The notes beneath the pieces were generated by a model. It did not search any database. It had not been told where the DNA came from and worked only from the letters and a program-made list of their open reading frames with translations. Shown here piece by piece: positions 10,400-60,710 of a stretch of DNA of 64,000 nt. The DNA comes from Macrostomum hystrix (lineage: Eukaryota; Animalia; Platyhelminthes): positions 5,642,001 to 5,706,000 of the forward strand of contig CATNEN010000025.1 of the NCBI GenBank assembly GCA_950097015.1, read 5' to 3'. The translations under genes and the position numbers were made by a program. Each line of letters opens with the position of its first letter. Positions within the stretch are counted from its first letter, which is position 1.

Positions 10400-13300
10400 T
10401 CACGGCTCGCAGCCGAACTCCTGACGTTCCAGTAGGACGGTCAGCTCCACGAATTCTCTGCCCAGACTCGATGCTTCTAATTGGCAGAGATTTTCCTGAA
10501 ACAATGAGACATGAATCATTTCAATAACAGGAAAATCAATATGACTGATGAATAAGGAGTTCAATTCACACACCTTGGCCTCAGCGGCAGCCAGGCGAAA
10601 TCTCGCCAGGTGCAACAGGTGCGACGACGCCGCGCTGACATCGCAATCGAAGCCACCGCGCTGCTGCTGCTGCTGCTGCTCGTCTGACAGCGGCGTACAG
10701 TCATTGCCACCGTTACTGCTGCCGGCATCGCCTCCATTGTCGTCCGTGCATCGCCCAAGACTCGTCACTGGGGAGCACAAGCGAACAGCTAGCAGCCTCT
10801 CGGACATTGTCAGTCGCAAATTTAGCCGAGCGTCCAACGGAAAGGCGTTGCTTAGCAACACGTGAAAGGTCAAATTGCTGCTCGTGCAGCCGCCGTAGCG
10901 CAACAGCCGCTGCCTCCGTCCGCCGTCGCCGCAATGCAGCGAAGCAGCGTCGGCCAGGCTCCAATTGCCCAGCGCCGGCGACACGAGTCTGGCTCCGAGC
11001 ACCTCCCAGAAGGCCGCTTTGGCGGAGCCGTCGGCGGCGTCGTCTCGTCCGCCGGAGTGGCCGCTGGCAGATCCGATGATGAAGACGTCGTTGGTTGAGC
11101 TGACGTCGCCGCTGCCGCTGGTGCTGATGTTCTTCCGGCTCGGACAGCAGCGCACAGGGGAGCAGGCGTTACCAGTGCCGACGCAGCTCTCGGGACGAAA
11201 CGGTATCGGTGTCGGCGGTGCTGACGATGTTGGCGTCGCGCCGTGCAGCGGCCGAGGCCACCGGCCTCCGGGCGGAGTTGTAAAGTGGCTCCTGTCGCTG
11301 CAAAACAGTAGAAAGACCACAGCGGGATATTTCAAATACCTCCATTTTTCTTTTTTGTCTGAATCTCCCAAAAATATTCAACAAATCATTATGAAAACCA
11401 AAAACATGAGCTAAAATTTTCGTTTTATCTGATGAAACAACTTCCATAATCAAAAAAACATCGGCCTCGTCGAGGTATTCAGCATTATCGTTGGGGTGTC
11501 TGGCTGGCAAAAACCAACAAATACAGGCATTATTTTTCTGCTCACTAAATTTTTTGAAGGAACCATGTCAGCTCCACAAACTATGTCAATCAGTAGTAGG
11601 GACCTTTGTTCTCAGCACCCCAGTCACCAGGGTCCCCTTCATCATCGTCTGGAGCATCGGCGGCGACTATATTGGGACCTTCAACAAAAGCACTCGATCA
11701 GCATCTAAAAGACGGCAACTTTTGTTAAAGGTCCCGACAGTCACCCGCCTCCCTCTCCACAGCCCACACTCTCCCCAGAATCACCCGCCTCCCTCTCCAC
11801 ACCCACCCCAGAATCACCCGTCTCCCTCTCCACACCCTCCCCAGAATCACCCGTCTCCCTCTCCACACCCTCCCCAGAATCACCCGCCTCCCTCTCCACA
11901 CCCTCCCCAGAATCACCCGCCTCCCTCTCCACACCCTCCCCAGAATCACCCGTCTCCCTCTCCACACCCTCCCCAGAATCACCCGTCTCCCTCTCCACAC
12001 CCTCCCCAAAATCACCCGCTGATGCTCCAGGCGGCGATGAATGGGACAACTAAAAGGAATGCTAGTTGTCCTTTTCACCAGGATCTTCGACAAGAATCGC
12101 TGAATATCTCGACGATGCTGACTCGGACGGATTTAAAAGTTATTTCGTAAAGGGTGGAATTTTTTGGTCAAAATGGTCGACTTTCATGAAAATCTGTTCA
12201 TTCGTTTTGGGAGCTATCGTGAACTAGGCAGTGGGTATTTCCCCATGGGATAAAATGGCATGGTCTTTCTACTGTTAAAAAGTAAGGCTGACGTTTCGTG
12301 GGATAAAGAGGCTTTTTAGTCTTACCCTTGGTGACTGCCAGTGCTGCTGCTGTTGCCACCGACCATGCTAGTCCCAGACAGATGCGGCAGCAGTTTCTCC
12401 ACCAGAAGCAGCGTAGCCAGGCCGAGAAAGCAGACAATGAGGATGACCAGAAGAGCAACGAGAACAACGTTGAAACGAAAGCTGCTTCGGCGTTGGGACT
12501 GTTGAAACAACTGCTGCTGACGCTGCTGCTGCTGCTGCTGCAGGTGGCATGGGAGTCGGCTCCGTTCAAGACTGCCTTGTTGCTCGCAGCAATGATTGGC
12601 CCCGGCCGATGCGGCTGCAGCTGAAGCGGCTAAGTTTGATATCGTTGACTTTGGAGACGGCTGGGGCAGTAGCGGCGGAGGCGGAGGCGGCGGAGGCGGC
12701 GGCGGCGGCGGAGACCACGAGAAGCCCGCCTCAATATCAGGATTGTACTGAGTTCCCACTGATTTAAAACGTGGCGGCGAACTGCAAAAAAATCCGACAG
12801 TTCAAATTCAGCTCTTATTGTTACCAATATTGAAAAAGTCTTTCTACTGTTAATCTCGTGATCTTCAATGCCCATCAACTGTCGCTTTCAGGCTAGATAT
12901 GTACATTCATTGACGCTTCATAAACAATGACGTTTAAAACGACTACATTTTACACATGTATGCACTGTGCTACTAGTAGTAGATGAATCGAGTAACACTA
13001 CCAAATAGAAAGGATTTTTAAACTCTCTATCGATCGCGGTATTAAATTGTAGAAAAGAGGCTCAGAATTTACATTGCACCTGGTCAAGACTCTCGGTAAA
13101 CTCTCCAAAAGAACTTTTTGCTTAAAAAGTGACTACTACTGTTGCATTTAGCTAAGATTTGCATAATCTCTTTGTAAGGCGAAGAAGTAGACCTGTAAAC
13201 TGATTCCAAGCGAAACACAATTTGATTCCCTGTTTGTTTACAAGTTTCACCGCCTCTGTAATCGCCAAAGACAGGCAGAAAAAAACTATAGAGGAGCCAC

Positions 13301-16300
13301 ATTGAAGGTGGTATCGAGTTTCTAAGCGAGGCTGCGGCACAATGGCTATCAATGTATTCGGACTAAACTTTGGCTACTATAGACAACTGCTGTTAATTGA
13401 TTGCGTTATCATGTCTGACAAGTCTATTGTAGCTGGGGTCAAATAAGACCTCCTAGTCACCCGCCTGCCTTTCCACACCCTCCCCAGAATCACCGGCCTC
13501 CCTCTCCACAGTCCACACCCTCCCCAGAATCACCCGCCTTCCTCTCTACAGTCTACACTCTCCCCAGAATCACCGGCCTCCCTCTCCACAGTCCACACCC
13601 TCCCCAGAATCACCCGCCTCCCTCTCCACAGTCCACACCCTCCCCAGAATCACCCGCCTCCCTCTCCACAGTCCACACCCTCCCCAGAATCACCCGCCTC
13701 CCTCTCCACAGTCCACACCCTCCCCAGAATCACCCGCCTCCCTCTCCACAGTCCACACCATCCCCAGAATCACCCGCCTCCCTCTCCACAGTCCACACTC
13801 TCCCCAGAATCACCCGCCTCCCTCTCCACAGTCCACACCCTCCCCAGAATCACCCGCCTCCCTCTCCACAGTCCACACCATCCCCAGAATCACCCGCCTC
13901 CCTCTCCACAGTCCACACTCTCCCCAGAATCACCCGCCTCCCTCTCCACAGTCCACACCCACTGCCAGAATCACCCGCCTCCCTCTCCACAGTCCACACC
14001 CTCCACAGAATCACCCGCCTCCCTCTCCACAGTCCACACCCTCCCCAGAATCACCCGCCTCCCTCTCCACAGTCCACACTCTCCCCAGAATCACCCGCCT
14101 CCCTCTCCACAGTCCACACCCTCCCCAGAATCACCCGCCTCCCTCTCCACAGTCCACACCATCCCCAGAATCACCCGCCTCCCTCTCCACAGTCCACACT
14201 CTCCCCAGAATCACCCGCCTCCCTCTCCACAGTCCACACCCACTGCCAGAATCACCCGCCTCCCTCTCCACAGTCCACACCCTCCACAGAATCACCCGCC
14301 TCCCTCTCCACAGTCCACACCATCCCCAGAATCACCCGCCTCCCTCTCCACAGTCCACACCCTCCCCAGAATCACCCGCCTCCCTCTCCACAGTCCACAC
14401 CATCCCCAGAATCACCCGCCTCCCTCTCCACAGTCCACACCCTCCCAGAATCACCCGCCTCCCTCTCCACAGTCCACACTCTCCCCAGAATCACCCGCCT
14501 CCCTCTCCACAGTCCACACCATCCCCAGAATCACCCGCCTCCCTCTCCACAGTCCACACCCTCCCAGAATCACCCGCCTCCCTCTCCACAGTCCACACTC
14601 TCCCCAGAATCACCCGCCTCCCTCTCCACAGTCCACACTCTCCCCAGAATCGCCCGCCTCCCTCTCCACACCCATCTTCACCGCTTGCATTGTTAAGTTG
14701 CTCAGTAAATTTTTTATATCATTAAATTGTGTAACGGATGGCAACAGCAATCACTAAGTGACCAGATATACTGATTCCAGTAAGAGAATGCCAATGAGAA
14801 ATGGACAGTTGAGAGATTTGTTAAACTGCCAGTCGCACCCCAGAAAATATTATCTAAAAATAAAAAGCACCTGTACGAGCATTGGAAAACAAAATGAGCT
14901 TTTAGTAATTTAAATTTTTGCTGCTAGCTTGCAATGATAAGGAGGTGACTCTAAACGACTCGACATAAATTTGATAAACTATTCTACTTACCTGAATAGG
15001 CTCTGACTTTAGACTCGATCTACAGTTGTGTCTAAACTGTGGTCAGCTGAGAAGCCCCACATTCGAATAGCACTTAATTCTAACATGCTCGGTCTCACTA
15101 ATATTTAGCTATTTTTGTGTACGAGTACAGCCATTTGTCTGCGCAATTCGACATTGAGTTTTGACAGAGCTTAGTGAAGGCTAGAGTAGGCTGTACAGAT
15201 TGGGTAGAGTAGGCTGTACAGATTGGGTAGAGTAGGCTGTACAGATTGGGTAGAGTAGGCTGTACAGATTGGGTAGAGTAGGCTGTACAGATTGGGTAGA
15301 GTAGGCTGTACAGATTGGGTAGAGTAGGCTGTACAGATTGGGGAGAGTAGGCTGTACAGGTTCGATAGAGTAGGCTGTACAGACTGGGTAGAGTAGGCTG
15401 TACAGATTGGGTAGAGTAGGCTGTACAGATTGGGTAGAGTAGGCTGTACAGATTGGGTAGAGTAGGCTGTACAGATTGGGTAGAGTAGGCTGTACAGATT
15501 GGGTAGAGTAGGCTGTACAGATTGGGTAGAGTAGACTGTACAGATTGGGTAGAGTAGGCTGTACAGATTGGGTAGAGTAGGCTGTACAGATTGGGTAGAG
15601 TAGGCCGTACAGATTGGGTAGAGTAGGCTGTAAGGATTGGGTAGAGTAGGGTAGAGAAGGCTGAACGAATATGATAGATTGGGGTAGCGGTGGAGTATTG
15701 ATGTTGTGATTGGGTACTGCTGAAGTACTTATAAACCACAGCCCAATTGACGCACCCAGTGACACAACCAGACGAAGCATCGTCAGCAACAGCAGCTGCG
15801 GCAGCGGCTGCAGTTGCAACAGACGAAGCGGAGGAAGCCGACGATCGTAGGGAGTCGCGCAGGCGGCACAGCTTGCTGCGCATTCGCTCCAGCTCGCCAA
15901 TTCGACAGTCTAAGCTGGCAGTCAGTTCGCCCAGCTGCTTGACGGCTCCAACATTCTCCATGTAGATTCGATCTTTGTTAACTAAGAGCAGCGGCTCTCC
16001 CGTGGGCACTCGCTCCGTGCTGCTGGCGTGCACAGCGTCTGGCAAGATGCCAGCCACCTCCTGGGCGATGACACCGGTGTCTGACATGTTCGGCGACAGG
16101 CTGTAGCTATAGATCTTGATGCGGCTGATGTTCGCCAGCTGGTCGGCGGGGCTGAGCTCACGTTCGATGGATTTGATGCGCGCATCGGATGGCTGCAGAA
16201 GGCTGCCGCGGAGCTGGAGGTTGCCGTTTACTGTCAACGCTTCGGCCGGATTCGGCGTGTTGATACCGACATTGCCTGTGTAGTAGACAACGCCAGGCCG

Positions 16301-18915: not shown

Positions 18916-21900
18916 ATGGCTAAACCAATTAACCCAATGCAAATAAAGTACCATGAGTTTGTTGTCAGTGACCGTGACATTGACTTTCTCAGGCAAAATC
19001 GTAAAGTTTTGGTTGATCTTCCCTTTGATATGGAACTTTTAAAGGGTAAGACACAGCATGCACACTTACTAATGAATCAATTTAAAGAATATGTTATTTG
19101 CTTAAGTAAGCTTAAGAAGCTTTAAGTTGTAATTGTATAGCAACATATTTTTTTGTGCCATTTGCGAACAGTAATTAGAAAGGGAAGCAGTTCCTAGTTA
19201 AAATTATATGTAGATTTATTTACAAGTTTCAATTGCTACTCTTAATTAAATGTAATTTAATGTAGAAAGCTGGGAATATTCTAAATAAATTTGAAACTGA
19301 AACTTAAGGTAAAAAATAAAGTGCTTTAAAACTGCTATTTTTTAATGTTGTAAGTAAAACTAAAAGGCCAATAATTTTCTTGGATTAAGCTTAGTAAGAT
19401 TAATATCAAGCTAGATAGATACTGCAATTAAACCTAACCTGAATAAGAAATCGTTTGTATTGTTTGTAACTAATTTCGGAGGCAGGGTATACCTTTGTAA
19501 AGTAAACAAGGTCCACTTTTATATTTATGAGCATATTTTTATCTATACCTTTTATGTATATATGTAGTTAGCAATATTTTTTAACCATTAGTTGTTTTAG
19601 TTTTAAATTTTTATAACCTATCTCATAAACATTGCAAATACCTAAGCTGAAACTTTAAGGGCTAAGATTTACACTGCCATGAATAGTAGCTAAAATCCTG
19701 CAATGAAACTTAACTTGTTAAGGCATTATTTAGTACAACACAATCATCTACTATATGTTCTCATTTTAGACAGCTAGTGTGGCTCCTATTTTATTTTTTT
19801 ACCACAGCATACATCAGTTGCTAGTTTAGTCATGATAGATTTTACTTTTTTTGCAAAGAATCTAGCTTCACTAACTTTTTTTCTAGAAAATCAAAAGTGC
19901 AAAAATTAATTTAAAAAAAATAAAAAATAAAATCAAAATTAAAAAAATGTACTGTAAAATATCCATTTTAGCATCGCACAAAATGAAATGCGGCAAGAAA
20001 GATGCATAACCAAAGTTATTATCAAAAGTGCTTTATATACAAGCCGCAACGTGCATATTGAGCGTGGGGAGGTGCAAGAGTGTAGCGTGAGTCAAAACAC
20101 CCCCGGCTTAGCGCGCCGGCGGGTGGTGCACCCACCCCTTGGCTAGGCGGCCAGGGTTTGAGTGTGACTGCACTGCAGATGGCGCTGCGTGCAGGCTTGG
20201 CCGCCACAACATGTTGTAGTTTATTAAAAAAATATTATGATATTTGGTTGACTTTTTGTACTGGTTTTTCCCATAAAAATACTATAGAATGCTACTCTTT
20301 GGATAAATCTTCTACCCGATAAGTGGAAAAGTCTATAATGAAAGGAATATTTAGATTTAAATAGTTTCTCCATCAGTCAAATTACAATATCATTAAGAGT
20401 CTATCGATTTTTTATTAGAACACTTTTAGAGACGTCATTTAGTTTTCCTTTCTTCTGAATGGGTAATATGAACTCTTTCTAACCTGCAACTTTAACCATT
20501 TGTGTAACAGCTGCTGCCAAGCTGTGTGCCAATCAGCCTAACCCGGCACTGCTGCAGAAAATCTGCTCTGCAGCCGCGGCCCCGGCTGACAATGAGAAGC
20601 GGGCCCTGGCTCTGGGCATCCTGCTGCGATTGTTCCGCTCCACCCGCGACCTGCCGCCTAAGCTGCGCCAGCGAGACCGCCTGCGCGAAGACCTGCGCCA
20701 GCTGAAGTACCCGGAGGCCTGGACTGACGGTCTGGTGGAGATGGCCTTCGATTCCGGGTTAGAAAATTTTTTCGAAGGACGCGATTTGAGTTCGCTGTGC
20801 CTGAAGGTGTCTGCCTGAAGAATGTTTCCAGATCGCCTGAAGGTGTCTGCCTGAAGAATGTTTCCAGATCGCCTGAAGGTGTCTGCCTGAAGAATGTTTC
20901 CAGATCGCCTGAAGGTGTCTGCCTGAAGAATGTTTCCAGATCGCCTGAAGGTGTCTGCCTGAAGAATGTTTCCAGATCGCCTGAAGGTGTCTGCCTAAAG
21001 AATGTTTCCAGATCGCCTGAAGGTGTCTGCCTGAAGAATGTTTCCAGATCGCCTGAAGGTGTCTGCCTGAAGAATGTTTCCAGATCGCCTGAAGGTGCCT
21101 ACCTGAAGAATGTTTCCAGATCGCCTGAAGGTGTCTACCTGACGAATGTTTCCAGATCGCCTGAAGGTGTCTGCCTGAAGAATGTTTCCAGATCGCCTGA
21201 AGGTGTCTGCCTGAAGAATGTTTCCAGATCGCCTGAAGGTGTCTGCCTGAAGAATGTTTCCAGATCGCCTGAAGGTGTCTACCTGAAGAATGTTTCCAGA
21301 TCGCCTGAAGGTGTCTGCCTGAAGAATGTTTCCAGATCGCCTGAAGGTGTCTGCCTGAAGAATGTTTCCATATCGCCTGAAGGTGTCTGCCTGAAGAATG
21401 TTTCCAGATCGCCTGAAGGTGTCTGCCTGAAGAATGTTTCCAGATCGCCTGAAGGTGTCTGCCTGAAGAATGTTTCCAGATCGCCTGAAGGTGTCTGCCT
21501 GAAGAATGTTTCCAGATCGCCTGAAGGTGTCTGCCTGAAGAATGTTTCCAGATCGCCTGAAGGTGTCTGCCTGACGAATGTTTCCAGATCGCCTGAAGGT
21601 GTCTACCTGAAGAATGTTTCCAGATCGCCTGAAGGTGTCTACCTGACGAATGTTTCCAGATCGCCTGAAGGTGTCTGCCTGAAGAATGTTTCCAGATCGC
21701 CTGAAGGTGTCTGCCTGAAGAATGTTTCCAGATCGCCTGAAGGTGTCTGCCTGACGAATGTTTCCAGATCGCCTGAAGGTGTCTGCCTGACGAATGTTTC
21801 CAGATCGCCTGAAGGTGTCTACCTGAAGAATGTTTCCAGATCGCCTGAAGGTGTCTACCTGAAGAATGTTTCCAGATCGCCTGAAGGTGTCTGCCTGAAG

Positions 21901-23627
21901 AATGTTTCCAGATCGCCTGAAGGTGTCTGCCTAAAGAATGTTTCCAGATCGCCTGAAGGTGTCTACCTGAAAAATGTAACAGTGTCCAAAAATTATCTTA
22001 CAAGGGCTTTCGAAGCAGTTTAGTTTCTACTTTAATCCTAACTGTCACACAGGTTCCTCGAGGCTGTTGACAAAGCTAAGAAAATCGATGCACGCACCGA
22101 ACCGATGAAAGATTTGTCGTGGAAAATTGATGTCAACATTTGTACCAGGTGCGTATTCTGCTACTTAAAGTAGGGTACCTGAGATTCTGTGAACTTTCGT
22201 TATGGTTTGATAGATAATTTTCTGTCTTATTGTAATTTTTTGCAGCAAAGTTGGCAAAATTCTGGAGCCAGTTGTGTCTCTCAGCTTCCGCACAGGCGAA
22301 AATTTGCACAGTTTTGAAGTAAGTTTAAAATAATAGACTCTCCAATGTTCACTCGCTCTACACCTAATGCTTAATGGTAAACAAGCTGCAGGCCAAACCC
22401 TCCAATGTACACTCACTCCGGATTGAACCCTCGAATGTACACTCTCTCCGGATTGAACCCTCGAATGTACACTCTCTCCGGATTGAACCCTCGAATGTAC
22501 ACTCACTCCGGATTGAACCCTCGAATGTACACTCACTCCGGATTGAACCCTCGAATGTACACTCACCGGATTGAACCCTCGAATGTACACTCTCTCCGGA
22601 TTGAACCCTCGAATGTACACTCTCTCCGGATTGAACCCTCGAATGTACACTCACTCCGGATTGAACCCTCGAATGTACACTCTCTTCGGATTGAACCCTC
22701 GAATGTACACTCTCTCCGGATTGAACCCTCGAATGTACACTCACTCCGGATTGAACCCTCGAATGTACACTCTCTTCGGATTGAACCCTCGAATGTACAC
22801 TCACTCCGGATTGAACCCTCCAATGTACACCCACTCCCAACCAAACCCTCCAATGTACACCAACTCCCAACCAAACCCTCCAATGTACACCCACTCCCAA
22901 TCAAACCCTCCAATGTACACCAACTCCCAACCAAACCCTCCAATGTACACCCACTCCCAACCAAACCCTCCAATGTACACCCACTCCCAATCAAACCCTC
23001 CAATGTACACCCACTCCCAACCAAACCCTCCAATGTACACCAACTCCCAACCAAACCCTCCAATGTACACCCACACCCAACCAAACCCTCCAATGTACAC
23101 CCACACCCAACCAAACCCTCCAATGTACACCCACTCCCAACCAAACCCTCCAATGTACACCCACTCCCAATCAAACCCTCCAATGTACACCAACTCCCAA
23201 CCAAACCCTCCAATGTACACCCACTCCCAACCAAACCCTCCAATGTACACCCACTCCCAACCAAACCCTCCAATGTACACCCACACCCAACCAAACCCTC
23301 CAATGTACACCCACTCCCAACCAAACCCTCCAATGTACACCCACTCCCAACCAAACCCTCCAATGTACACCCACACCCAACCAAACCCTCCAATGTACAC
23401 CCACACCCAACCAAACCCTCCAATGTACACCCACTCCCAACCAAACCCTCCAATGTACACCCACTCCCAACCAAACCCTCCAATGTACACAAACTCCTGA
23501 CTATTATACGTCAATTGTTTGCCAGGTACCATTGTCAAAGTTTCACCAACTTCGTTTCGCTGTGGCCGACCTGCTCAAAGACATGGCCCAGTTGGAGAAC
23601 CATCCCGCTGTTAAGTTGGACGGCTAA
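18916..23627 (+). CDS. COMMD5: COMM domain-containing protein 5; join(18916..19045,20511..20757,22053..22148,22246..22318,23526..23627), 215 aa
   Basis: All introns GT-AG and phase-consistent. COMM domain DLSWKIDVNICTSKVGKILEPVVSLSF...FEVPLSKFHQLRFAVADLLKDMAQLE matches the COMMD5 pattern WRVDV..S...L.PSVL...FEVP..KFQELR..VA..LKEM..LE. Confidence 0.88.
20061..20197. ncRNA. Candidate structured ncRNA / conserved GC-rich element, copy A (COMMD5 intron 1)
   Basis: Homologous to 55247-55388 with conserved hairpins and compensatory substitutions; TATATA at 20034. No known RNA family recognised. Confidence 0.45.
20797..21975. repeat. Minisatellite, 36-bp unit tcgcctgaaggtgtctgcctgaagaatgtttccaga (~32 copies), COMMD5 intron 2
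   Basis: Tandem periodicity; starts ~40 nt after donor 20758; source of the spurious 408-aa ORF. Confidence 0.98.
22393..23490. repeat. Bipartite minisatellite, two related 30-bp units, COMMD5 intron 4
   Basis: tcactccggattgaaccctcgaatgtacac up to ~22820, then ccactcccaaccaaaccctccaatgtacac. Confidence 0.98.
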
Positions 23628-31594: not shown

Positions 31595-31950
31595 TGGTTA
31601 CCTGTTAACCAGTTGGATGGTTACCTGTTAATTAGTTGGGATGGTTACCTGTTAATCAGTTGGGATGGTTACCTGTTAATCAGTTGGGATGGTTACCTGT
31701 TAATCAGTTGGGATGGTTACCTGTTACTTAGTTGGGATGGTTACCTGTTAATCAGTTGGGATGGTTACCTGTTAATCAGTTGGGATGTTTACCTGTTAAT
31801 TAGTTGGGATGGTTACCTGTTAACCAGTTGGATGGTTACCTGTTACTTAGTTGGGATGGTTACCTGTTAACCAGTTGGATGGTTACCTGTTAATTAGTTG
31901 GGATGGTTACCTGTTAACCAGTTGGGATGGTTACCTGTTAATCAGTTGAT
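31595..31950. repeat. Minisatellite, 24-bp unit gttacctgttaatcagttgggatg, NAXD 3' flank
   Basis: Starts ~15 nt after stop codon 31580. Confidence 0.96.
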
Positions 31951-41294: not shown

Positions 41295-41400
41295 AGAGTT
41301 GAGTAGATATGTGAGGAGAGCTGGGTTGAGTAGATGTTTGAGATGAGTTAAGTAGATGGATCAGGAGAGTTGAGTAGATGTGTGAGGAGAGTTGAGTAGA
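41295..41400. repeat. Short ~22-bp tandem repeat gagttgagtagatgtgtgagga after the METTL7-like stop
   Basis: 4-5 degenerate copies starting ~15 nt after stop 41281. Confidence 0.8.
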
Positions 41401-44807: not shown

Positions 44808-47800
44808 ATGGATCCGAACGAGTCTGATAATGCGTCCTTCGAGTCTTTCTCTGGCAGCGAGGATGGCAACGAAGGTCACGATTTTGATGACTTCGATGAC
44901 GAGTCAATCGTAGCTCAGGGCGAGCTGACTCTCGAAGATGACCCGCAGCTGAGCTCGCTACTGCCCAAGTCTTTTGATGCAAACTACCACGACGACGAGG
45001 AGGAAGGCGAATGCCAGGACGACGAAGGCGAAGATTCTGTCGAGACTGTGACTGCTGGCAAGTCTGAACCGCCTCTGAATGAAAGGCCTTCTGAATCTGT
45101 CTTGAATCCATCGCTTGACACACGAAAGAAGAAAAAGAGGTTTAATTTGGTTTGTGATTAAAATTATCCTATTTAGGAAACGCATTTTCTGCGTTCCCAC
45201 ACGTTTACATTTTATTTTCTTTTTTGCATCTGCAATTTCAGAATATATACAATATGTCTTGCGAATTGTAAATACGATGTTGGTAAGTCAAATTTGCATT
45301 TTTTTCTGCTTCTAGTGGAACAGAGATGAGATTGAGTCTTAATTTTGCAGTTCGCGACTGCGCCAGAAAGCTCGGCTTGAAGGAAGTTGACGAAGAAGAC
45401 GATTGGAATCTATTCTGGACTGACTTTGCCGTCTCAATGGATCGGGCCTGTGCAATGAAAAAATATCAGGTCTATTTTAAACGTTTTTTTCTGGCTTCTC
45501 GAGGCTAGGGCGAGGGCGAGGGCGAAGATTGATAAAGTTAATGACGGAAAGTGAGGAATAGAGAGATTATGGACATAAATACATCAAATATATAGAACGC
45601 GCGCAGGTGAGAAAGTCGATTGATAGAGTAAATTAATTGCTTTGATTATCAAAATTTCAGAAAATCAATCATTTCCCTGGCATGAGCGAAATCTGCCGCA
45701 AAGACTGTCTGGCCAGGAATCTGGGTCGCATGCGGCGCCTATTTCCCAAAGAGTTCAACATATCGCCGCGCACCTGGGTATTGCCGGCCGAGTGAGTGCG
45801 GGAGAGTGGGATTTGAAGATGAAATTTTGTGGATGGGATACAGAGTCTGAGATATTGTGGATGGGATACTGAGTCTGGGATATTGTGGATGGGATACAGA
45901 GTCTGGGATATTGTGGATGGGATACTGAGTCTGAGATATTGTGGGTGGGATAACTGAGTCTGAGATATTGTGGATGTGATACTGAGTCTGAGATATTGTG
46001 GGTGGGATAACTGAGTCTGAGATATTGTGGATGGGATAACTCAGTCTGAGATATTTTGGAAGGGATACAGAGTCTGGGATATTGTGGATGGGATAACTCA
46101 GTCTGAGATATTGTGGAGGGATACTGAGTCTGGGATATTGTGGATGGGATAACTCAGTCTGAGATATTGTGGATGGGATACTGTGGATGGGGTACAGAGT
46201 CTGGGATATTGTGGAAGGGATACAGGGTCTGGGATATTGTGGACGGGATACAGAGTCTGGGATATTGTGGAGGGATACTGAGTCTGGGATATTGTGGATG
46301 GGATAACTCAGTCTGAGATATTGTGGATGGGATAACTCAGTCTGAGATATTGTGGAAGGGATACAGAGTCTGGGATATTGTGGACGGGATACAGAGTCTG
46401 GGATATTGTGGAGGGATACTGAGTCTGGGATATTGTGGATGGGATAACTCAGTCTGAGATATTGTGGATGGGATACAGAGTCTGGGATACTGTGGATGGG
46501 GTACAGAGTCTGGGATATTGTGGAAGGGATACAGGGTCTGGGATATTGTGGACGGGATACAGAGTCTGGGATATTGTGGAGGGATACTGAGTCTGGGATA
46601 TTGTGGACGGGATACAGAGTCTGGGATATTGTGGACGGGATACAGAGTCTGGGATATTGTGGATGGGGTACAGAGTCTGGGATATTGTGGACGGGATGCA
46701 GATTCTGGGATATTGTGGACGGGATACAGAGTCTGGGATATTGTGGAGGGATACTGAGTCTGGGATATTGTGACGGGATACAGAGTCTGGGATATTGTGG
46801 ACGGGATACAGAGTCTGGGATATTGTGGATGGGGTACAGAGTCTGGGATACTGTGGATGGGGTACAGAGTCTGGGATACTGTGGATGGGGTACAGGGTCT
46901 GGGATATTGTGGACGGGATGCAGATTCTGGGATATTGTGGACGGGATACAGAGTCTGGGATATTGTGGATGGGGTACAGAGTCTGGGATATTGTGGACGG
47001 GATACCGAGTCTGGGATATTGTGGATGGGATACAGAGTCTGGGATATTGTGGAAGGGATACAGGGTCTGGGATATTGTGGAAGGGATACAGAGTCTGGGA
47101 TATTGTGGATGAGATACAGAGTCTGGGATATTGTGGATGGGTTACAGAGTCTGGGATATTGTGGAAGGGATACAGAGTCTGCGTTATTGTGGAAGGGATA
47201 CAGGGTCTGGGATATTGTGGAAGGGATACAGAGTCTGGGATATTGTGGATGGGATACAGAGTCTGGGATATTGTGGAAGGGATACAGAGTCTGGGATATT
47301 GTGGATGGGTTACAGAGTCTGGGATATTGTGGAAGGGATACAGAGTCTGGGATATTGTGGATGGGATACAGAGTTTGGGATATTGTGGATGGGAAACTGA
47401 GTCTGGGATATTGTGGATGGGGTACAGAGTCTGGGATTTTGTGGATGGGGTACAGAGTCTGGGATATTGTGGATGGGATACAGAGTCTGGGATTTTGTGG
47501 ATGGGGTACAGAGTCTGGGATATTGTGGATGGGGTACAGAGTCTGAGTGGAGTGGTACTGAAGTCAGTATATTTTTGTTCCAGTCAGTCTTGCTAGAACA
47601 TTGTGCATGAAAAGTTAGGGTAGTAAAATATTCCGTCTGAAGATGATAGATAAGTGTTATGTGTGCTGTAGAAGTGTAGGCCTATCCAATTATAAAGTAA
47701 GCACTCAAATATATAAAAATCTCATTTCATTCTCTAACGACTTAAACACGCACCTGTCGTGAACTGTCTTTGAAGTAATTAAAGAAAACTTCAGAGAACG

Positions 47801-50800
47801 AAAAAAATCTTCATTTATTGCTGTTTCCATTGTTTATCAGTTTCGAAGTTTTTTTTTCAATTGAGGCCGAAAATGAGTTTTTTCGAAGCTCTACAAAACG
47901 GCTCATTGTGCCGGTGGAAAACCCCTTTCAGAGAGAGATCGAAAGAAAAAGATGGCAACAGAAGGCTAGAGAGCTGAAAAGCTCAGAACAGAAACTGCAG
48001 CATACAGATTATATTTCACAGAGAGAGAGAGAGAGAGAGAGAGAGCAAAGTTTAGGCAGTTTAGGCAGATAATATGCTGCTTAAGTTAAATCTCTATCCT
48101 GTCATATTCTCTAATTTTCTCGAACTCGAACAAAACCAGGTGTTGAGCACGTCCAGAATGGTTTACAGTCTAATTACAGGGAAATTGAGCAGTCTGTATA
48201 GCTTTGGGGTCGTGTGGGACACAGCGGTGGTCATCGAATAGGCGCGAATTAATAGCGGGGTCTCTCCGGAGGGGGTCTACCCTACTACTCCAATATACTA
48301 TTCATTCTCTATCTATCAAATTTTCTTACATAAAGTACTATGAGTATATTTTTGCTAAGAAAAGCAAACAGCATACGCCGACACGGAAAGTGCGTCGAGC
48401 AAGACTGTAAAATGCTTGCGGTAGAAATCTTGAACAAACAGAATTTCACTAACAGATCTTCAGATTTAGGTTAGACTTTTATGTGCTTACGTTTTGTGGT
48501 CGCTAATTTCTCTTTTTGTTTGTTCAAAATTTTTGGCCGTTGTAAAAATGTGCTGAATCAATTTTTCTCTCTTTCTATTAAATCGTTTGTGGAGACGTAT
48601 GTCAAACTTTGGGATATTTCGACCTTGGGATATTTCGACCTTGGGATATTTCGACCTTGGAAGCCTTAGATGTTTTCGAATTTAGGTTTTTTATTTTGAA
48701 TATATCAAACTAACGCACAGATCCATATAAAACTGAAATAAAATTTTTCAGCTACTCGGACCTGCAGGCCTACGCCAGATCTCGCAAGCATCGTACTTAT
48801 ATTTTGAAGCCGGACGCTGGTTGTCAGGGACGCGGCATCTGGTTCACCCGCAGCGTCAAGGATATCAGGCCGACTGACAATCAGGTCTGCCAGCTCTATG
48901 TGTCAAAGGTGAGCATATCGACTCATGCTCAGATCCTTCTCGTGCTCATATCCTTCTCGTGCTCAGACCCTTCTCATGCTCAGATCCTTCTCATTCTCCT
49001 TCTCATGCTCAGATCCTTCTCATTCTCCTTCTCATGCTCAGATCCTTCTCATTCTCCTTCTCATGCTCAGATCCTTCTCATTCTCCTTCTCATGCTCAGA
49101 TCCTTCTCGTGCTCATATCCTTCTCGTGCTCAGATCATTGTCGTGCTCAGACCCTTCTCATGCTCAGATCCTTCTCATTCTCCTTCTCATGCTCAGATCC
49201 TTCTCATGCTCCTTCTCATGCTCAGATCCTTCTCATTCTCCTTCTCATGCTCAGATCCTTCTCATTCTCCTTCTCATGCTCAGATCCTTCTCATTCTCCT
49301 TCTCATGCTCAGATCCTTCTCGTGCTCATATCCTTCTCGTGCTCAGATCATTGTCATGCTCAGACCCTTCTCATGCTCAGATCCTTCTCATTCTCCTTCT
49401 CATGCTCAGATCCTTCTCGTGCTCAGATTCTTTTCGTGCTCAGATCCTTCTCATGCTCAGATCCTTCTCGTGCTCAGATCCTTTTCGTGCTCAGATCCTT
49501 CACATGCTCAGATCCTTCTCATTCAGATTTCTATTTAAAGAAACTATAAGCCAGCCCACTTAAACAAAATTCCCAGCATCTAGAATCCCAATTCAACAGC
49601 ATGTGACGCCAGCTGGGCCACTTGTAAACAAATCCTAAATTTTCGTTTGTTTGCTTTCTTTCTCGCAGCCGACGTGATTGCATGCTGCATCGGCCTGTGA
49701 GAACTCTCCCAGGAACAATGTACTTTTTGTTAGCCTTAAGTCACTGCAATCATTGCTAGCTATTTTCTGCTTTGCAGCTGTAATTGGCCATGTTGGGACA
49801 ATTTTTTTCTTTCAGCCATTCCTAATTGACGGATTCAAGTTCGACTTGCGTGTCTATGCTCTGGTTACGAGCTGCGATCCGTTTAGAATCTTTGTTTTCA
49901 AAGACGGCCTGGCTAGATTTACCACAGTCAAGTATAGAGATCCCACAGCGGCTAATCTGGTGAGCTTTGGCTGGCATTCTTTGGACCCTGGGGGTTGGGG
50001 CTGGGTACGTGTTGGTGCTGGGGTGTTGGGGCTGGGGTGTTGGGGCTGGGGTGTTGGGGCTGGGGTGTTGGGGCTGGGGTGTTGGTGCTGGGGTGTTGGG
50101 GCTGGGGTGTTGGGGCTGGGGTGTTGGGGCTGGGGTGTTGGGGCTGGGGTGTTGGTGCTGGGGTGTTGGGGCTGGGGTGTTGGGGCTGGGGTATTGGGGC
50201 TGGGGTGTTGGGGCTGGGGTGTTGGGGCTGGGGTGTTGGTGCTGGGGTGTTGGGGCTGGGGTGTTGGGGCTGGGGTGTTGGTGCTGGGGTGTTGGGGCTG
50301 GGGTGTTGGGGCTGGGGTGTTGGGGCTGGGGTGTTGGGGCTGGGGTGTTGGGGCTGGGGTGTTGGGGCTGGGGTGTTGGTGCTGGGGTGTTGGGGCTGGG
50401 GTGTTGGGGCTGGGGTGTTGGGGCTGGGGTGTTGGGGCTGGGGTGTTGGTGCTCGGGTGTTGGGGCTGGGGTGTTGGTGCTGGGGTGTTGGGGCTGGGGT
50501 GTTGGGGCAGGGGTGTTGGGGCTGGGGTGTTGGGGCTGGGGTGTTGGGGCTGGGGTGTTGGTGCTGGGGTGTTGGGGCTGGGTTGTTGGGGCTGGGATGT
50601 TAGCACTTAACACTTATCTCAATTATTAAATTAAACTAATGTTAAGAAAAACATATTTTTTTTCAAAACTTCTCAGGACAATGTATTTATGCACCTGACC
50701 AACTACGCGGTGCAAAAGAATTGCCGTGATTTCGTTCGCGACAATGAGGAAGGCGGAACTAAAAGGTGTGGCACACCTCTTGCTCATAATCATTCCAATA

Positions 50801-53528
50801 AACCGCTATTCCTCTCACCCTCCGCGTACATTTGAAAATTTCTAATCGGTTGTCAGGCGAATCTCTACAGTCAACCGTTGGCTGGCTAGCAACGGATACG
50901 ATGTAGCTAAACTGTGGTCAGATATTGATGACGTCATCATCAAGACAGTCCTGTCCGCGCACGGCGTCCTTCGGCACAATTACCGCAGCTGCTTCCCGGA
51001 TGCTGCGCCGGCGACCTCCGCCTGCTTTGAAATTCTCGGCTTCGACATCATTCTGGACAGGAATCTGAAGCCTATAGTTCTCGAGGTTTGCGCTTTTTCG
51101 ATTGTCGGGATCTGAATCTGGGATCTGAATCTAGTGGGATCTGAATCTAGTGGGATCTGAATCTAGTGGGATCTGAATCTAGTGGGATCTGAATCTAGTG
51201 GGATCTGAATCTGGTGGGATCTGAATCTAGTGGGATCTGAATCTGGGATCTGAATCTAGTGGGATCTGAATCTAGTGGGATCTGAATCTGGTGGGATCTG
51301 AATCTAGTGGGATCTGAATCTGGGATCTGAATCTAGTGGGATCTGAATCTGGGATCTGAATCTGAGATCTGAATCTGGGATCTGAATCTAGTGGGATCTG
51401 AATCTGGGATCTGAATCTGGGATCTGAATCTGGGATCTGAATCTAGTGGGATCTGAATCTAGGATCTGAATCTGGGATCTGAATCTGGGATCTGCATCTA
51501 GTGGGATCTGCATCTAGTGGGATCTGAATCTGGTGATAAGTGAAATAAGTGAAAAAGTTGAATCTCATAGCATTCGCATATCTAAAAAAAGCTCACAAAA
51601 GCTGCTCGTAATAAAAACCAATACAATCGAACCTTGTTAAACTGCTCAAAGAAAATGCATAAAGCGGAGGTCCATTCAACAGCAAACCCTGAAACGACAG
51701 GCTCAGGGTTTGTAGGTCAAAGTGGGGCCCAAAATGCTTAGACTCCAGCAATGCCCTCAGATACAAGGATAGAGACTTCCTGATTGGCGTGCAATTTCAT
51801 CCTCCTTTTAAAGAAGGCTTGCTTTTCTTTCTCTTCTCTTTTCTTAAACTCCCCCCCCGCATTGACTTCCTTGCCTGAGCACTAGCTGCGTATACTCACG
51901 GAGTAGAAGACAGACAGACAGACAGACAGCTCCATTATTTGGCAAATGCTTAAGCACCGTTGCAAACCAACGCCTCATCATAAGCTCAACCAGAGCCTTA
52001 GCAACGACACATTTGAGCACCCAGCGCTGGCTAAAGTACACAATCAGCTGTCAGTTCGCAGTTTGCATTATTGTAGGATAGGGCAATAAATATGGCAATA
52101 AAAATGCTCAACATTCCTGAACTATTTTGAGTCCCGGAAAAGCGAGGCTTTCCACTCAGTCACTCCACTTTTTCCCCCCAGTTTCGTCAAACAGAGTGGG
52201 ATTTCATTGTCGTAGGAGCAGCAGCAGCATCTCAGGGTTGAATGCTTTCTGTTTGTTTGCTATCGTTTTGAGTTCGATTGTTCTACTGGCATTGCTGCAT
52301 CATGTTAGGGACTCGGATTTCTCTTTGAATCCAATTCTGCTCAATCTCAGCTGGCAAAATCACCCGATCGCTGTCTCTCGTATTCTAAACGCTTACACCC
52401 GCTTAAAATTCCCCAGGTAAATCATAGCCCTTCATTCAGCACAGATTCTCAGCTAGATGTCGACATCAAATCCGCGTTAATCTGGGATACCTTGCGGCTA
52501 GTCAACATTGGCGCCATCGACAAGCGCAAAGCGATGGAAGAGGAGCGACGGAAAGCGCGGGACCGCCTGTTTCAACGGGGCAGCCGGCGAGATACCAGGT
52601 GACACTGGTCACCTTAACTGACCTAATATAGCCCTGATCAACTGTGAAGCAACCTGCCATTGACACCCGCCTCGCACCCTGCCCCTGATAACATCCACCT
52701 CACACTTTGCCTCGAAAACACCCCACCCCACACCCTGTCGCCGATAACACCCCACACCCTGCCTCCGTTAACACCCGCCTCACACACTTTCCCCGATAAC
52801 ACCCACCTCACACCCTGTCCACGATAACACCCGCCTCACACCCTGTCCCCGATAACACCCACCTCACGCCCTGTCCCCAATAATACCCGCCTCACACCCT
52901 GTCCACGATAACACCCACCTCACGCCCTGTACCCGATAACACACGCCTCCCACCCTGTCCCAGATAACACCCGCCTCACACCCTGTCCCCAATAATACCC
53001 GCCTAACACCCTGTCCCCGATAACACCCACCTCATGCCCTGTCCCCAATAATACCCGCCTCACACCCTGTCCCCAATAATACCCGCCTAACACCCTGTCC
53101 CCGATAACACCCAACCCTCCTAAAGCCCTGGCCGGATCGATTGTTTCCAACTAGTGATCCATGCCATCTTTAAGTCTACCACTATCCGCTAGTCACATTC
53201 TTTCTCTGCCACCCATATCTTTAGAGAGGACTCGGAGCGAGACTCGGCCCAATCAGTTGAAGCTCTCAAGCGCTACGAAGACGCTCATCTGGGCAATTAT
53301 CGTCGGATCTATCCGCCAGAAGACGGCCAGCCGGATCGCTACGAGCGCTACCTCACCCAAGCTGGCTCGATCTATCACGAGACTGCGGCTGCTAGGGCCA
53401 GGGCTGACTGCGCCAGACAGCTCAGACGAGAACTGGAACGAAAATGGGCCGAGGAGCGAGAGATCGCTAGTAGGCAGCAACAACAGCAGCAGCAGACTAG
53501 TAATGCTGTGTCAAAGCGAAAGCCTTTA

Positions 53529-53560
<32 letters not shown>

Positions 53561-54537
53561 AGCCAGACCAGAGAGTCCGACCGACTCATCGTCTGCTGCG
53601 GGGTCGGTGAGAGGCAAAGCGAAGCGGCCAACACCAACCCAGCATACGCCGCCTCTGCCACCGCACCGGTCGCTTCGCATGACTAAACGCGCGGCCACCA
53701 GCTACTCGCTGGCGTCTAGAGAGGTTGGAAAATAAAATATTTAAGTGCCTTCTTCCTACACTACTTATTAAGTAGCGCTTAAAGAAAATAGCTTTTTACT
53801 ACTTTATGAAAACTAACGTTGAGTACTATCTTCAGTACTCTATTAAGTAGTATTTAGTGAGTTCTGTCACGAGTTGCATCTGTATCGAGTGGGATCTGTA
53901 TCAATTGGGATCTGTATAGAGTTGGATCTGTATAGATTGGGATTTGTATAGATTGGGATATGTATAGATTGGAATCTGTATAGTTGAATCTGTGAAACAG
54001 AATGGGGATCCTTGGATATCACTCGACCACTGCCACCGTCGCCGTCGTCAGGCCGCTCGCGAGCGCAGCGAGGCGGAGCTGCAGCAGCGCAGCGCGGCGG
54101 ACACAACCCGGCCGCAGCCGATCCTTGACGAAGAAGAGATCGAGCGCCTCTCTGGTTTGCTCCAGCGTGACAGCCTGCTGAGAAGCATGGGCATCACGGA
54201 GCTGGTCTACCGGATGCTGCACTGCACCCCTGGCACAATGGCCTCGGTTGCTCCGGTAAGCCAGCTACCCGCCCTGGCCAAGACTGCGACTTCATCAACT
54301 GGAGCCAGTATGCGCTCGGCCAGGCTGCAACAGCAGCAGATGGTGATGCTGATGCAGCTGCAGCGGCAGGCGACTGCGCCGGAGCTGCCGGCTGCCACCG
54401 TGTCGGGGTTTGGTCGAAGTGGTCCTGGTAAGAGTCAGAAATCATATAGAATGTTTTGTATAGAGAAGCCTTATAAATTCTAAATCAAATTAAAAATCCA
54501 ATCAAATGCAGACAACCGCGGCGCTACAATAGTCTAT

Positions 54538-55246: not shown

Positions 55247-55388
55247 GCGCGTGGTGAGGTGCGCAAGAGTGACGTAAGTCAACAACCCCCCAGGCTTAGC
55301 GAGCCGGTGGGCGGTGCACCCACCCCGGACTATAGGCGGCCGGGGGTTGAGTATGAATGCACCAGAAAACCGCTCTGCGTCCAGGCCT
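55247..55388. ncRNA. Candidate structured ncRNA / conserved GC-rich element, copy B (between TTLL and Rabaptin-5)
   Basis: Homologous to 20061-20197; folds as a multi-hairpin junction; TATAAA at 55223. Confidence 0.45.
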
Positions 55389-56885: not shown

Positions 56886-59800
56886 ATGGATCTTAATCAG
56901 CCACAAGAAGTTGGTGTTACTGAAGCGGTGACATCATTGCCACCTCTATCAACCGCACAATTATCATCCTCATGTCCTAATTTAATTTTGTGTCTAGACA
57001 ATGCTACAGTCGGTTGTGATGGTAGTGTTGACTGTCCTAAACGAAAAAGGCGACAATCTGTAGGTGATGGCAATGCTTCTGGGCAGCCTATATTTGGTAA
57101 GCTGAACTCAAAATTCATTCTTACAATAATAGTTCCATCTATACTTAATACTTATGCCTTAATCGGTCATTTGGTTTGGGAGCTATCGTGAAGTAGGCTT
57201 TCTCCAGGGAGAAAATAGTGTGATCTTTCTACTGTTAAGGCCTATAAGTCTATTTGTAACTAACTACATTGTACTGCTTTTAACTGGAGAATTTCAAATG
57301 GAGTATAGAAATTTTAAAGTTAAGTTTCACCCTGAACCGATTGACTCCTAAACTGCATATATCTCTTATGCACTAGTCCAGAGAATAGGTGTTTAGCGTG
57401 GAGTTGTCTCCCCAGTTTCTAGATTCAGAGCTTTGCCCGCCTCGCTGCCACCCCGATTCTCCGCTAGTTGCCGCAGCCACCGCAGCCCGCTGCCAGATGT
57501 GTCAGAGCTGGCGCTCCGAGGTTCGACGCCTCCGCGCCGCCCAGCGCCAAGCCGAAGCCGCCGCAGCGGCCGAAGCTGCCAGTCGTCAGCGCGAAGCCAA
57601 TCGGGCAGCTGAACTAGCCGACGCTCTGGAACGCTTAGACACCGCGTGTCGTCGTTCCGACGCTGCTCACGTTGAAAAACTCGACGATCTCAGCAAGCAG
57701 CTGTCCGAGGCGTCTGGCCGAGTAAATCAGCTGCGCGACCGCCTGGAATCCTGCCGCTCCAGCCTCGGCGATCAGCTCTCCTGCCTAATTCGCGATCGAG
57801 ACCAGCTGCAGGACGGCATCGACCAGCTGCAGGGCTGGTACGACGACCTTCTGGCAGCCGGGCGCGACTCGGCCGACAGCCTACGACAGGACCTGCTGGA
57901 GGGCATTCCGGCAGCGGCAGACGAGTTGCAGGCCAGTTACATGTTCTCTTCGGTTTAAATCCCCCTATAATAATAGTAATATTAATAAGAATCATTGATT
58001 ACACCTGCCCCAATTGGGCCCGATATGCAGGCGAAAGCACAGTCTCAGCTATTGCGCAGCGCATCTGAGGGCTGTGTACGGCTGTTCAGTCCATGGACTG
58101 GGGAGACGTACCCTCAATTACTCCAGCTAATGCTGGTATACCCGTTTAACAGCTTTGTGAACTGAAGCAATGCAGAGTTAAGTCTCTTGCTAAAAGACAC
58201 AAATAGTTTCAGCAGAGTCGGGAATCGAACCCCCGACCTTTAAATCGTGATTCCGACGCTTTAACCACCTGGCTACAACCTCTTATGTAAGGTATTAAAC
58301 TTACAGTATTGAATATATCCCTATACAGTTAAGTTAATCCCATCTGAAGATATCCCATAGAATCAGCTTATTCCTGTCCTTATTTTATGTTATATTTTTG
58401 CTGAATATATTTTTCGCGCCTTACTATGAGTAGGATAATAAGGACGTTAACAATTTAATTTTCCGTATTCGCCAACTGCAGGTCCTAGTGCTAAAGTTGA
58501 AGGAGGATCTCATTGCCGAGCGCGTCACCCGGGAGCACCTGGAGCGCCGCTATCAATCCGAGGCTGAGTTCGAGCGCCGTAAACTGCTCAGCGAATCCGA
58601 GCAGCTGCGCCAGACCGAAGAGTGCCTACAGACCGAGACGGACAGATGCGACCGGCTCCGCTCCGAGCTGGCCAGGGAGCGCGGCGCCAAGGAGGCGGCC
58701 CAGGCCCAGCTGGCCAACCTGCAGGAGAAGTCGCGCGAGGTGGCCGCCAACCTGAGGTCAAGCGAGGCCGAGCTCAAGGCCAGGGCGGGCCGGCTTGAGG
58801 CCGACAATGCGGAGCTGCGGCACCGGGTTACCTGCCTGCAGGTGGGTTTGGGATGGCAGAATGCTCGAGTGGGGAATGGGATAATTCTGGAGTGGGGAAT
58901 GGAATAATGCTAATGTGGGGAATGGGATAATGCTAGTGTATGGGGAATGGGATAATGCTAGTGTATGGGGAATGGGATAATGCTAATGTGGGGAATGGGA
59001 TAATGCTAGTGTATGGGGAATGGGATAACGCTAGTGTATGGGGAATGGGATAATGCTAGTGTATGGGGAATGGGATAATGCTAATGTGGGGAATGGGATA
59101 ATGCTAGTGTATGGGGAATGGGATAATGCTAGTGTATGGGGAATGGAATAATGCTAATGTGGGGAATGGGATAATGCTAGTGTATGGGGAATGGGATAAT
59201 ACTGGTGTGGGGAATGGGATAATGCTACAGAGGGGAATGATAATATTCTTTCGCTGAGGAAAGGATTGTAGAGGTGTGGGGAATGGGATAATGCTGGTGT
59301 GGGGAATAGGATAATTCTGGAGTGGGGAATGGGATAATGCTGGTGTGGGAAATGGGATAATTCTGGAGTGGAGAATGGGATAATTCTGGAGTGGGGAATG
59401 GGATAATGCTGGTGTGGGAAATGGGATAATTCTGGAGTGGAGAATGGGATAATTCTGGAGTGGGGAATGGGATAATGCTGGAGTGGGGAATGGGATAATT
59501 CTGGAGTGGGGAATGGAATAATGCTAATGTGGGGAATGGGATAATGCTAGTGTATGGGGAATGGGATAATACTGGTATGGGGAATGGGATAATGCTGGTG
59601 TGGGGAATGGGATAATACTGGTGTGGGGAATGGGATAATGCTGCAGAGGGGAATGATAATATTCTTTCGCTGAGGAAAGGATTGTAGAGGTGTAGGGAAT
59701 TGAAAATTTCCGTCATTGGGAATAGAAAAAAAAAGATTTTAGGATATAGAAATAGTGCAAATGATGGGAATAGAATATTGCTGGTGTGGGAATAAAAAGT

Positions 59801-60284: not shown

Positions 60285-60710
60285 CATCACAGCAATCACC
60301 TTAGCAACAAAGTACATCACCTTAGCAACAAAGTACATTACCTTAGCAACAAAGTACATCACCTTAGCAACAAAGTACATTACCTTAGCAACAAAGTTCA
60401 TCACCTTAGCAACAAAGTACATCTCCTTAGCAACAAATTTCATCACCTTAGCAACAATGTGCTTCACCTTAGCAACAATGTGCTTCACCTTAGCAACAAT
60501 GTGCTTCACCTTAGCAACAAAGTACATCACCTTAGCAACCAATTACACCACCTTAGCAACAAAGTTCATCACCTTGGCAACAAAGTACATTACCTTAGCA
60601 ACAAAGTACATCACCTTAGCAACAAAGTTCATCACCTTAGCAACAATGTGCTTCACCTTAGCGATAATGTGCATCACCTTAGCAACAAAGTACATCTCCT
60701 TAGCAACAGT
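60285..60710. repeat. Minisatellite, 21-bp unit catcaccttagcaacaaagta, Rabaptin-5 3' flank
   Basis: Starts ~36 nt after stop 60249. Confidence 0.97.

What the first reader, a model, noticed from the sequence alone, without database searches (positions are those of the whole stretch)
11745..60710. Exon-edge minisatellites: many introns and several stop codons are abutted by their own tandem array
Seen in sequence: about 20 arrays with different units (9-45 bp) start or end very close to a predicted exon boundary. Approximate gaps after donors: MYRF 0; COMMD5 40, 75; NAXD 15; RMC1 25, 40, 18, 12; METTL7 16; TTLL 33, 13, 28, 19, 60; RABEP1 20. Gaps before acceptors: MYRF ~10, NAXD ~7, TTLL ~8. 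Gaps after stops: NAXD 15, METTL7 15, RABEP1 36. Arrays spare the splice dinucleotides and never enter coding sequence. The distal part of the long introns is usually ordinary AT-rich DNA. Inference: a locus-independent process seeds or amplifies repeats at the GC-rich exon / AT-rich intron transition (for example splicing-coupled R-loops, nucleosome-edge breaks or local rolling amplification). It would be a main driver of intron length here. High simple-repeat content alone is known for some flatworm genomes; the positional rule is the candidate novelty.
Basis: partly seen in the sequence, partly recalled or inferred. Interest (0 to 1): 0.85.

Follow-up and report, generated by a model that had tools for sequence, protein, structure and literature searches.

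The report
Donor-hugging minisatellites inflating flatworm introns
In this Macrostomum flatworm genome about half of the intron DNA is short tandem repeats that mostly begin just after an exon ends; they look like ordinary variable repeats that grew inside once-tiny introns and persisted across species while changing sequence, and only their preference for the downstream side of exons is unexplained.

Summary
Largely real, but less special than claimed. The window (a Macrostomum species other than M. lignano) holds 33 minisatellites, none in coding DNA; 18 of 33 introns carry one (49% of intron bases). Arrays start within 45 nt of a donor in 11/18 introns against 3.8 expected (p about 1e-4, threshold post hoc). 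Post-stop bias is weak (p about 0.02); acceptors and start codons show none. The MYRF gaps given are wrong. Syntenic M. lignano genes have the same intron positions. Nine of 15 orthologous introns carry arrays in both species, with different units but shared composition. Gaps are fixed between homeologs while copy number varies up to 4.9-fold. Several M. lignano introns are an array plus only 29-69 nt, and one 91-nt window intron is array-filled there. Best reading: old VNTRs born inside minimal introns, with later growth mostly 3' of the array. R-loop and splice-junction-copy models were not supported. The 5' polarity remains partly unexplained. The scan noted this pattern on many other windows of this genome; one earlier follow-up found no splice-site attraction.

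The parts
2844..3530 (+). 20-bp array, 142 nt after the stop of an SLC22-like gene
10146..10286 (-). 22-bp array, 113 nt after the MYRF stop
11632..12047 (.). Foldback-like element with 32-nt inverted ends; holds the 33-bp array 11764-12019; mid-intron in MYRF intron 5 (11298-12325), gaps 306/466
13472..14670 (-). 40-bp array, mid MYRF intron 4, same unit family as the 11764 array
15182..15650 (-). 23-bp array in MYRF intron 4 (12782-15755), donor gap 105 (41 with degenerate copies)
20799..21977 (+). 36-bp array in a COMMD5-like intron (20758-22052), gaps 41/75
22393..23497 (+). 30-bp array in a COMMD5-like intron (22319-23525), gaps 74/28
28995..29617 (+). 22-bp array, NAXD intron 1 (28981-29729), gaps 14/112
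30311..30885 (+). 17-bp array, NAXD intron 2 (29778-30889), gaps 533/4, acceptor-adjacent
31595..31948 (+). 24-bp array 14 nt after the NAXD stop; M. lignano has a related array after its stop
32380..32844 (+). 45-bp array 179 nt before the RMC1 ATG; related array at the same place in M. lignano
33541..33835 (+). 21-bp array, RMC1 intron 1 (33506-34006), gaps 35/171; interspersed repeat 33853-33949 directly after it
34430..34778 (+). 22-bp array, RMC1 intron 2 (34362-34853), gaps 68 (16 extended)/75
35121..35239 (+). 18-bp array, RMC1 intron 3 (35103-35814), gaps 18/575; SINE-like repeat 35330-35510 in the distal part
36401..36590 (+). 9-bp-based array, RMC1 intron 4 (36400-36841), gaps 1/251
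40139..40603 (+). 21/42-bp array, METTL7 intron (40124-40771), gaps 15/168 (95 extended)
41325..41400 (+). 22-bp short array 43 nt after the METTL7 stop, upstream of the first AATAAA (+201)
45820..47545 (+). 28-bp array, TTLL intron 4 (45792-48751), gaps 28/1206
48922..49524 (+). 17/29-bp array, TTLL intron 5 (48909-49815), gaps 13/291
49988..50601 (+). 14-bp G-rich array, TTLL intron 6 (49960-50676), gaps 28/75, G4 motifs on the sense strand
50766..50856 (+). TTLL intron 7: 91 nt, no array; its M. lignano ortholog is 59 nt plus a 175-nt array
51107..51535 (+). 16-bp array, TTLL intron 8 (51086-52416), gaps 21/881
52663..53113 (+). 28-bp array, TTLL intron 9 (52599-53224), gaps 64/111
53878..53983 (+). 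16-bp array, TTLL intron 10 (53724-54000), gaps 154/17
58853..59655 (+). 23-bp array, RABEP-like intron 3 (58842-59910), gaps 11/255
60295..60708 (+). 21-bp array 45 nt after the RABEP-like stop, upstream of the first AATAAA (+1240)

Best explanation
These are ordinary but very abundant VNTR-type minisatellites (units mostly 16-30 bp) that arose by local tandem duplication inside minimal introns (about 70-130 nt) and short 3' regions. They expand and contract from within by slippage or unequal exchange, between fixed flanks (shown for M. lignano homeologs). Birth inside a tiny intron puts both ends near exons from the start. The 5' splice signal needs only about 6 nt, while the branch point and pyrimidine tract need more, so arrays survive closer to donors (inferred from general splicing knowledge). 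Later insertions and decay of distal copies lengthen the intron mainly 3' of the array (partly shown). Many arrays predate the split from M. lignano and have turned over their unit by concerted evolution (inferred from shared position and composition). Coding DNA is kept clear by purifying selection. No dedicated exon-edge seeding machinery is needed, though the model does not fully explain why later growth is mostly 3'.
For: Array-free introns are mostly 68-134 nt, and donor gaps of the 14 window arrays within 75 nt fit birth in such an intron (KS p=0.59 on that subset). Four M. lignano orthologs are an array plus 29, 38, 59 and 69 nt. TTLL intron 7 is 91 nt here and 59 nt plus an array in M. 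lignano; NAXD intron 3 is 76 nt here and array-bordered there. Flanks are the same length and mostly 93-100% identical among homeologs while array length varies 1.8-4.9-fold. In the long CKS intron of M. lignano, arrays lie over 1.5 kb from both ends. Orthologous arrays share base and k-mer composition (11 pairs, p 0.0015-0.02). Distal parts hold interspersed repeats and on average resemble their own array more than other arrays (16 segments, mean rank fraction 0.32, my arithmetic). At 45 nt M. lignano shows no excess over uniform placement (6/14 vs 5.2).
Against: In the window, donor adjacency persists after reserving 3' signal space, extending arrays over degenerate copies and subtracting identified repeats (13/18 vs 5.3), and among introns with at least 200 nt of non-array DNA (7/10 vs 1.2). 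Stops show the same polarity (5 within 150 nt vs 1.9, p 0.016; starts 0), where no intron geometry applies. M. lignano shows a donor excess at 90 nt (11/14 vs 7.6, p 0.015). Most distal DNA is not identified as insertion or decayed array. Shared composition could reflect repeated seeding from conserved local sequence rather than common ancestry.
Confidence: 0.6

Rival explanations
1. A transcription-polar mutational process (for example breaks or repair slippage at the downstream edge of GC-rich coding exons) seeds or maintains arrays just 3' of exons, at donors and stops alike, independent of intron size.
For: Donor excess is robust within the window. Post-stop excess but none before starts. 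Upstream exon ends are somewhat GC-richer for array introns (0.59 vs 0.47, p 0.06). Promoter-proximal introns of TTLL and MYRF are short and array-free, and for TTLL this holds in both species.
Against: No sense-strand G bias (11 G-rich, 8 C-rich) and G4 motifs in only 3/19 intronic arrays. The longer array-free introns after the GC-richest exon ends (SLC22 0.73, RABEP 0.69) have no array. No excess at 45 nt in M. lignano. An earlier follow-up on another window reported no attraction (s1-291362, not checked).
Confidence: 0.2
2. Selection keeps arrays next to donors because they act as, or carry, intronic splicing enhancers or structural elements that help exon definition once the intron is long.
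For: The same introns keep arrays of similar strand skew in both species. 22/32 units have GGG or CCC runs. G4 motifs near splice sites modulate splicing in mammals and birds (PMC9065059).
Against: G-rich and C-rich arrays both occur on the sense strand, units are otherwise unrelated, donor strength does not differ between array and non-array introns (p 0.57), copy number varies freely, and stops show the same pattern. The section headings of PMC9065059 state that G4 enrichment does not extend beyond vertebrates.
Confidence: 0.08
3. The donor bias is a local or ascertainment effect: one gene-dense window, thresholds chosen after seeing the data, and TRF boundaries that miss long decayed 3' tails.
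For: n=18 introns from seven genes; post hoc thresholds; weaker in M. lignano; an earlier follow-up found no bias (s1-291362).
Against: p about 1e-4 by several statistics, including a threshold-free log-gap sum; extension over degenerate copies strengthened the bias.
Confidence: 0.12

Closest known systems
Intronic VNTR minisatellites (general class)
   Same: Locus-specific units of 9-47 bp, strong strand skew, variable copy number between fixed flanks, degenerate edge copies, absent from coding DNA.
   Different: Density: over half of the introns carry one, and they make up half of intron DNA. A donor-side bias and cross-species persistence with unit turnover were not found described for Macrostomum in my searches.
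Amphioxus 'mirage' minisatellites (PMC3087553)
   Same: Arrays at exon-intron boundaries, length-unstable, concerted evolution inside the array with the boundary copies left out.
   Different: Mirage units copy the splice junction and exon edge. Here the longest match of any array to the neighbouring exon end is 4-8 nt and no unit carries a consensus donor.
High tandem-repeat content of Macrostomum genomes (PMC5730564, PMC10468722)
   Same: Simple and tandem repeats are 15% of the M. lignano genome; mean intron 558-1114 nt across three species.
   Different: Neither paper uses the word minisatellite or satellite, or describes position within introns; PMC10468722 leaves the nature of the repeats for later work. 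The window has 33% array DNA.
G-quadruplex motifs near splice sites (PMC9065059)
   Same: Repeat-like G-run sequence close to splice junctions.
   Different: That enrichment favours the non-template strand and vertebrates; here there is no strand preference and only 3/19 intronic arrays have G4 motifs.

Membership tests
VNTR minisatellite | Head-to-tail units of about 9-100 bp in arrays of 0.1-several kb | tested here: met
VNTR minisatellite | Locus-specific unit, not a dispersed satellite family | tested here: met
   32 distinct unit families among 33 arrays; one family shared between neighbouring MYRF introns
VNTR minisatellite | Copy number varies between alleles or copies with fixed flanks | tested here: met
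   shown for the M. lignano orthologs, 1.8-4.9-fold among homeologs; not shown for the window species
VNTR minisatellite | Arrays present on raw long reads of this genome | not testable with these tools
Mirage / splice-site minisatellite | Unit contains the exon edge plus the splice dinucleotide | tested here: not met
   matches to exon ends of only 4-8 nt; no donor consensus in any unit
R-loop- or G4-seeded repeat | G-rich non-template (sense) strand | tested here: not met
   11 G-rich, 8 C-rich; G4 motifs in 3/19
Minisatellites with a shared core motif | One short motif over-represented across unrelated units | tested here: inconclusive
   TGGGAT in 8/32 window units vs 1.4 expected (family-wise p 0.012), not replicated in M. 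lignano (2/34)
Transposon-borne minisatellite (MITE internal array) | Array enclosed by terminal inverted repeats, with copies elsewhere | tested here: inconclusive
   only the 11764 array has inverted flanks; no second copy of the flanks in the window or the fetched loci

The most novel reading that the evidence does not exclude
Macrostomum has a transcription-polar process that creates or maintains minisatellites specifically just downstream of coding exons (donors and stop codons, not acceptors or starts), so the same introns stay array-bearing across species while units turn over, making it the main engine of intron length in the genus.
Probability: 0.2. Interest if true: 0.75.

Novelty: new variant of a known kind. 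Interest (0 to 1): 0.42.

Why it matters
Intron growth is usually credited to transposons. Here private minisatellites supply half or more of the intron DNA, persist in orthologous introns between species about 76-78% identical in protein, and change unit. With three sequenced Macrostomum species, M. lignano homeologs and transgenesis, birth, turnover and position of minisatellites become directly testable genome-wide. If the downstream-of-exon polarity survives a control for ancestral intron length, it would point to an undescribed mutational or selective asymmetry.

Tried and rejected
Splice sites were validated by open frames and by identical intron positions in M. lignano (RMC1, METTL7, CKS, TTLL introns 1-8); NAXD introns 1-2, COMMD5, RABEP, MYRF and TTLL introns 9-11 rest on open frames and splice consensus only. 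Database searches used single exons or open frames by reference; joined models were not sent to any search tool and were built only inside scripts for frame checks and local comparison with fetched sequences. Rejected: MYRF exon at 12016-12049 (34 nt, breaks frame, coincides with an inverted repeat arm); mirage origin; sense-strand G bias; weaker donors in array introns; a GC gradient between donor and acceptor gaps (p 0.27); a shared core motif (not replicated). No intronic sequence conservation between species outside one interspersed repeat family and a 33-nt match. Rfam gave nothing. Wasik et al. 2015 was not held. The last acceptor of the M. lignano MTPAP-like gene used is probably about 45 nt off (model 549 vs 533 aa); this touches one 3' gap only. 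The CKS intron of M. lignano was placed from tblastn to within a few bases.
Full report
Source. The METTL7 exon, RMC1 and CKS match Macrostomum lignano proteins at 78%, 76% and 92%, and the order NAXD-RMC1-METTL7-CKS-TTLL is conserved on M. lignano contigs. The window is therefore another Macrostomum species. An earlier scan note names M. hystrix (s1-402555); I did not test that.

Gene models. I built ten models by hand; each reads open to a single stop. COMMD5 lacks its 5' exons. For RMC1, METTL7, CKS and TTLL introns 1-8 the M. lignano copies have introns at the same codon positions, and the M. lignano RMC1 and METTL7 exons reproduce their annotated proteins exactly. Searches were made exon by exon by reference; the joined step was left out of all search tools.

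Observation. With fixed criteria (TRF score at least 100, at least 70 bp, at least 3 copies) the window has 33 arrays covering 33% of it. None overlaps coding DNA, against 12.4 expected. Eighteen of 33 introns carry arrays, which make up 11,556 of 23,374 intron bases; ten of the 15 array-free introns are 68-102 nt. The MYRF gaps are wrong: exon 12326-12781 splices in frame to 11297, and the 11764 array sits mid-intron between 32-nt inverted repeats. It shares its unit with the mid-intron array at 13472 but not its flanks, which suggests local copying.

Is the position more than chance? Placing each array at random in its own intron, 3.8 of 18 would start within 45 nt of the donor; 11 do (p about 1e-4; 0.0035 with 60 nt reserved at the 3' end; a threshold-free log-gap statistic agrees). 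In introns with at least 200 nt of non-array DNA it is 7 of 10 against 1.2. Extending arrays over degenerate copies and removing identified repeats does not weaken it. Acceptors show no excess (3 vs 3.8). Five stops have an array within 150 nt against 1.9 expected (p 0.016), and no start does. So the rule is not 'exon edge' but 'downstream of a coding exon'. These tests reuse the window that suggested the idea.

Out-of-sample test. In 14 array-bearing M. lignano introns there is no excess at 45 nt (6 vs 5.2) and a modest one at 90 nt (11 vs 7.6, p 0.015); ten of them are orthologs of window introns. The test has little power there because many introns are almost all array: residuals of 29, 38, 59 and 69 nt.

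History of the arrays. Of 15 orthologous introns, nine carry arrays in both species, three in neither, three in M. lignano only (Fisher p 0.044; TTLL intron 8, CKS and NAXD intron 3 counted). Units differ, yet orthologous arrays resemble each other in 1- to 6-mer composition more than shuffled pairs (p 0.0015-0.02; six or seven of 11 pairs rank first or second). Among the three M. lignano homeologs the gaps are constant and the flanks mostly 93-100% identical while array length varies 1.8- to 4.9-fold. This is VNTR behaviour and argues against assembly artefact. TTLL intron 7 is 91 nt in the window and 59 nt plus a 175-nt array in M. lignano, a direct case of an array inside a minimal intron (gain or loss not polarised). 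In the 4-kb CKS intron of M. lignano the arrays lie far from both ends.

Mechanism. Birth in a minimal intron predicts donor gaps with quartiles of 14, 21 and 31 nt; the 14 window arrays within 75 nt fit this (KS p 0.59, a selected subset). Distal DNA includes a SINE-like repeat and another dispersed repeat and some decayed copies. R-loop seeding predicts G-rich sense strands; 11 arrays are G-rich and 8 C-rich. Mirage origin predicts exon-edge copies; none was found. Donor strength and gap GC do not differ; upstream exon GC is marginal (p 0.06). I therefore favour minimal intron, then array, then mainly 3' growth (0.6). What stays unexplained is why growth is mostly 3' (donor gap shorter in 15/18; p 0.004 unreserved, 0.18 with 60 nt reserved) and why stops share the polarity. 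A polar mutational process is the main rival (0.2).

Comparison. High tandem-repeat content is published for M. lignano (15%, PMC5730564); the M. hystrix and M. cliftonense paper leaves the repeats uncharacterised (PMC10468722). Junction-copy 'mirages' are known from amphioxus (PMC3087553) but this window's arrays fail that test. My searches found no description of a donor-side bias or of intron-private arrays in this genus; most subscription papers, including Wasik et al. 2015, were not searchable. The scan has noted the same pattern on many other windows, and one follow-up there concluded that arrays are not drawn to splice sites; my window disagrees, while my M. lignano set is intermediate.

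Verdict. Real arrays, a real donor-side skew in this window, mostly explained by intron geometry and history. New variant of a known kind; interest 0.42.

Noticed in passing
window 11632-12047: Foldback-like element in MYRF intron 5: 32-nt terminal inverted repeats plus an inner 17-nt hairpin, enclosing the 33-bp array; no other copy of the flanks found.
   Followed up: partly
window 6334-6592, 35330-35510, 58007-58258: Three copies of a SINE-like repeat (70-80% identical), all intronic. In array-free introns these and another repeat (12198-12278, 57167-57238) also lie nearer the donor than the acceptor.
   Followed up: partly
window 9852-10025 and 33853-33949; L010 about 14562-14741: A dispersed repeat shared with M. 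lignano, where one homeolog has it inserted inside the RMC1 intron 4 array, splitting it.
   Followed up: partly
window 20062-20196 and 55249-55386: Two 79% identical GC-rich copies in AT-rich DNA (also noted as s1-402505); no Rfam match at gathering score.
   Followed up: partly
all window arrays: Arrays are CpG-poor (observed/expected 0.25) while exons are not (0.97) and other intron DNA is intermediate (0.65); could reflect methylation of arrays or a bias in which seeds expand.
   Followed up: no
window 61575-64000: About 240 nt of unique DNA plus the following array recur about 1,462 nt later, a tandem duplication of array and flank.
   Followed up: no
window 24190-25896; L001 3354-4134: Longer units built from a 4-bp microsatellite in both species, suggesting micro- to minisatellite conversion.
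   Followed up: no
window 57932: RABEP-like intron 2 was modelled with a GC donor; a GT donor 24 nt downstream is also in frame.
   Followed up: no
L002 and L003, about 12.6-17.3 kb: Two M. lignano homeologs carry a second, diverged METTL7 copy downstream of the first; the third homeolog and the window do not. One homeolog lacks the NAXD last exon within 10 kb upstream of RMC1.
   Followed up: no
unit lengths, window and M. lignano loci: Unit lengths cluster at 20-24 bp in both species (13/32 and 17/34).
   Followed up: no
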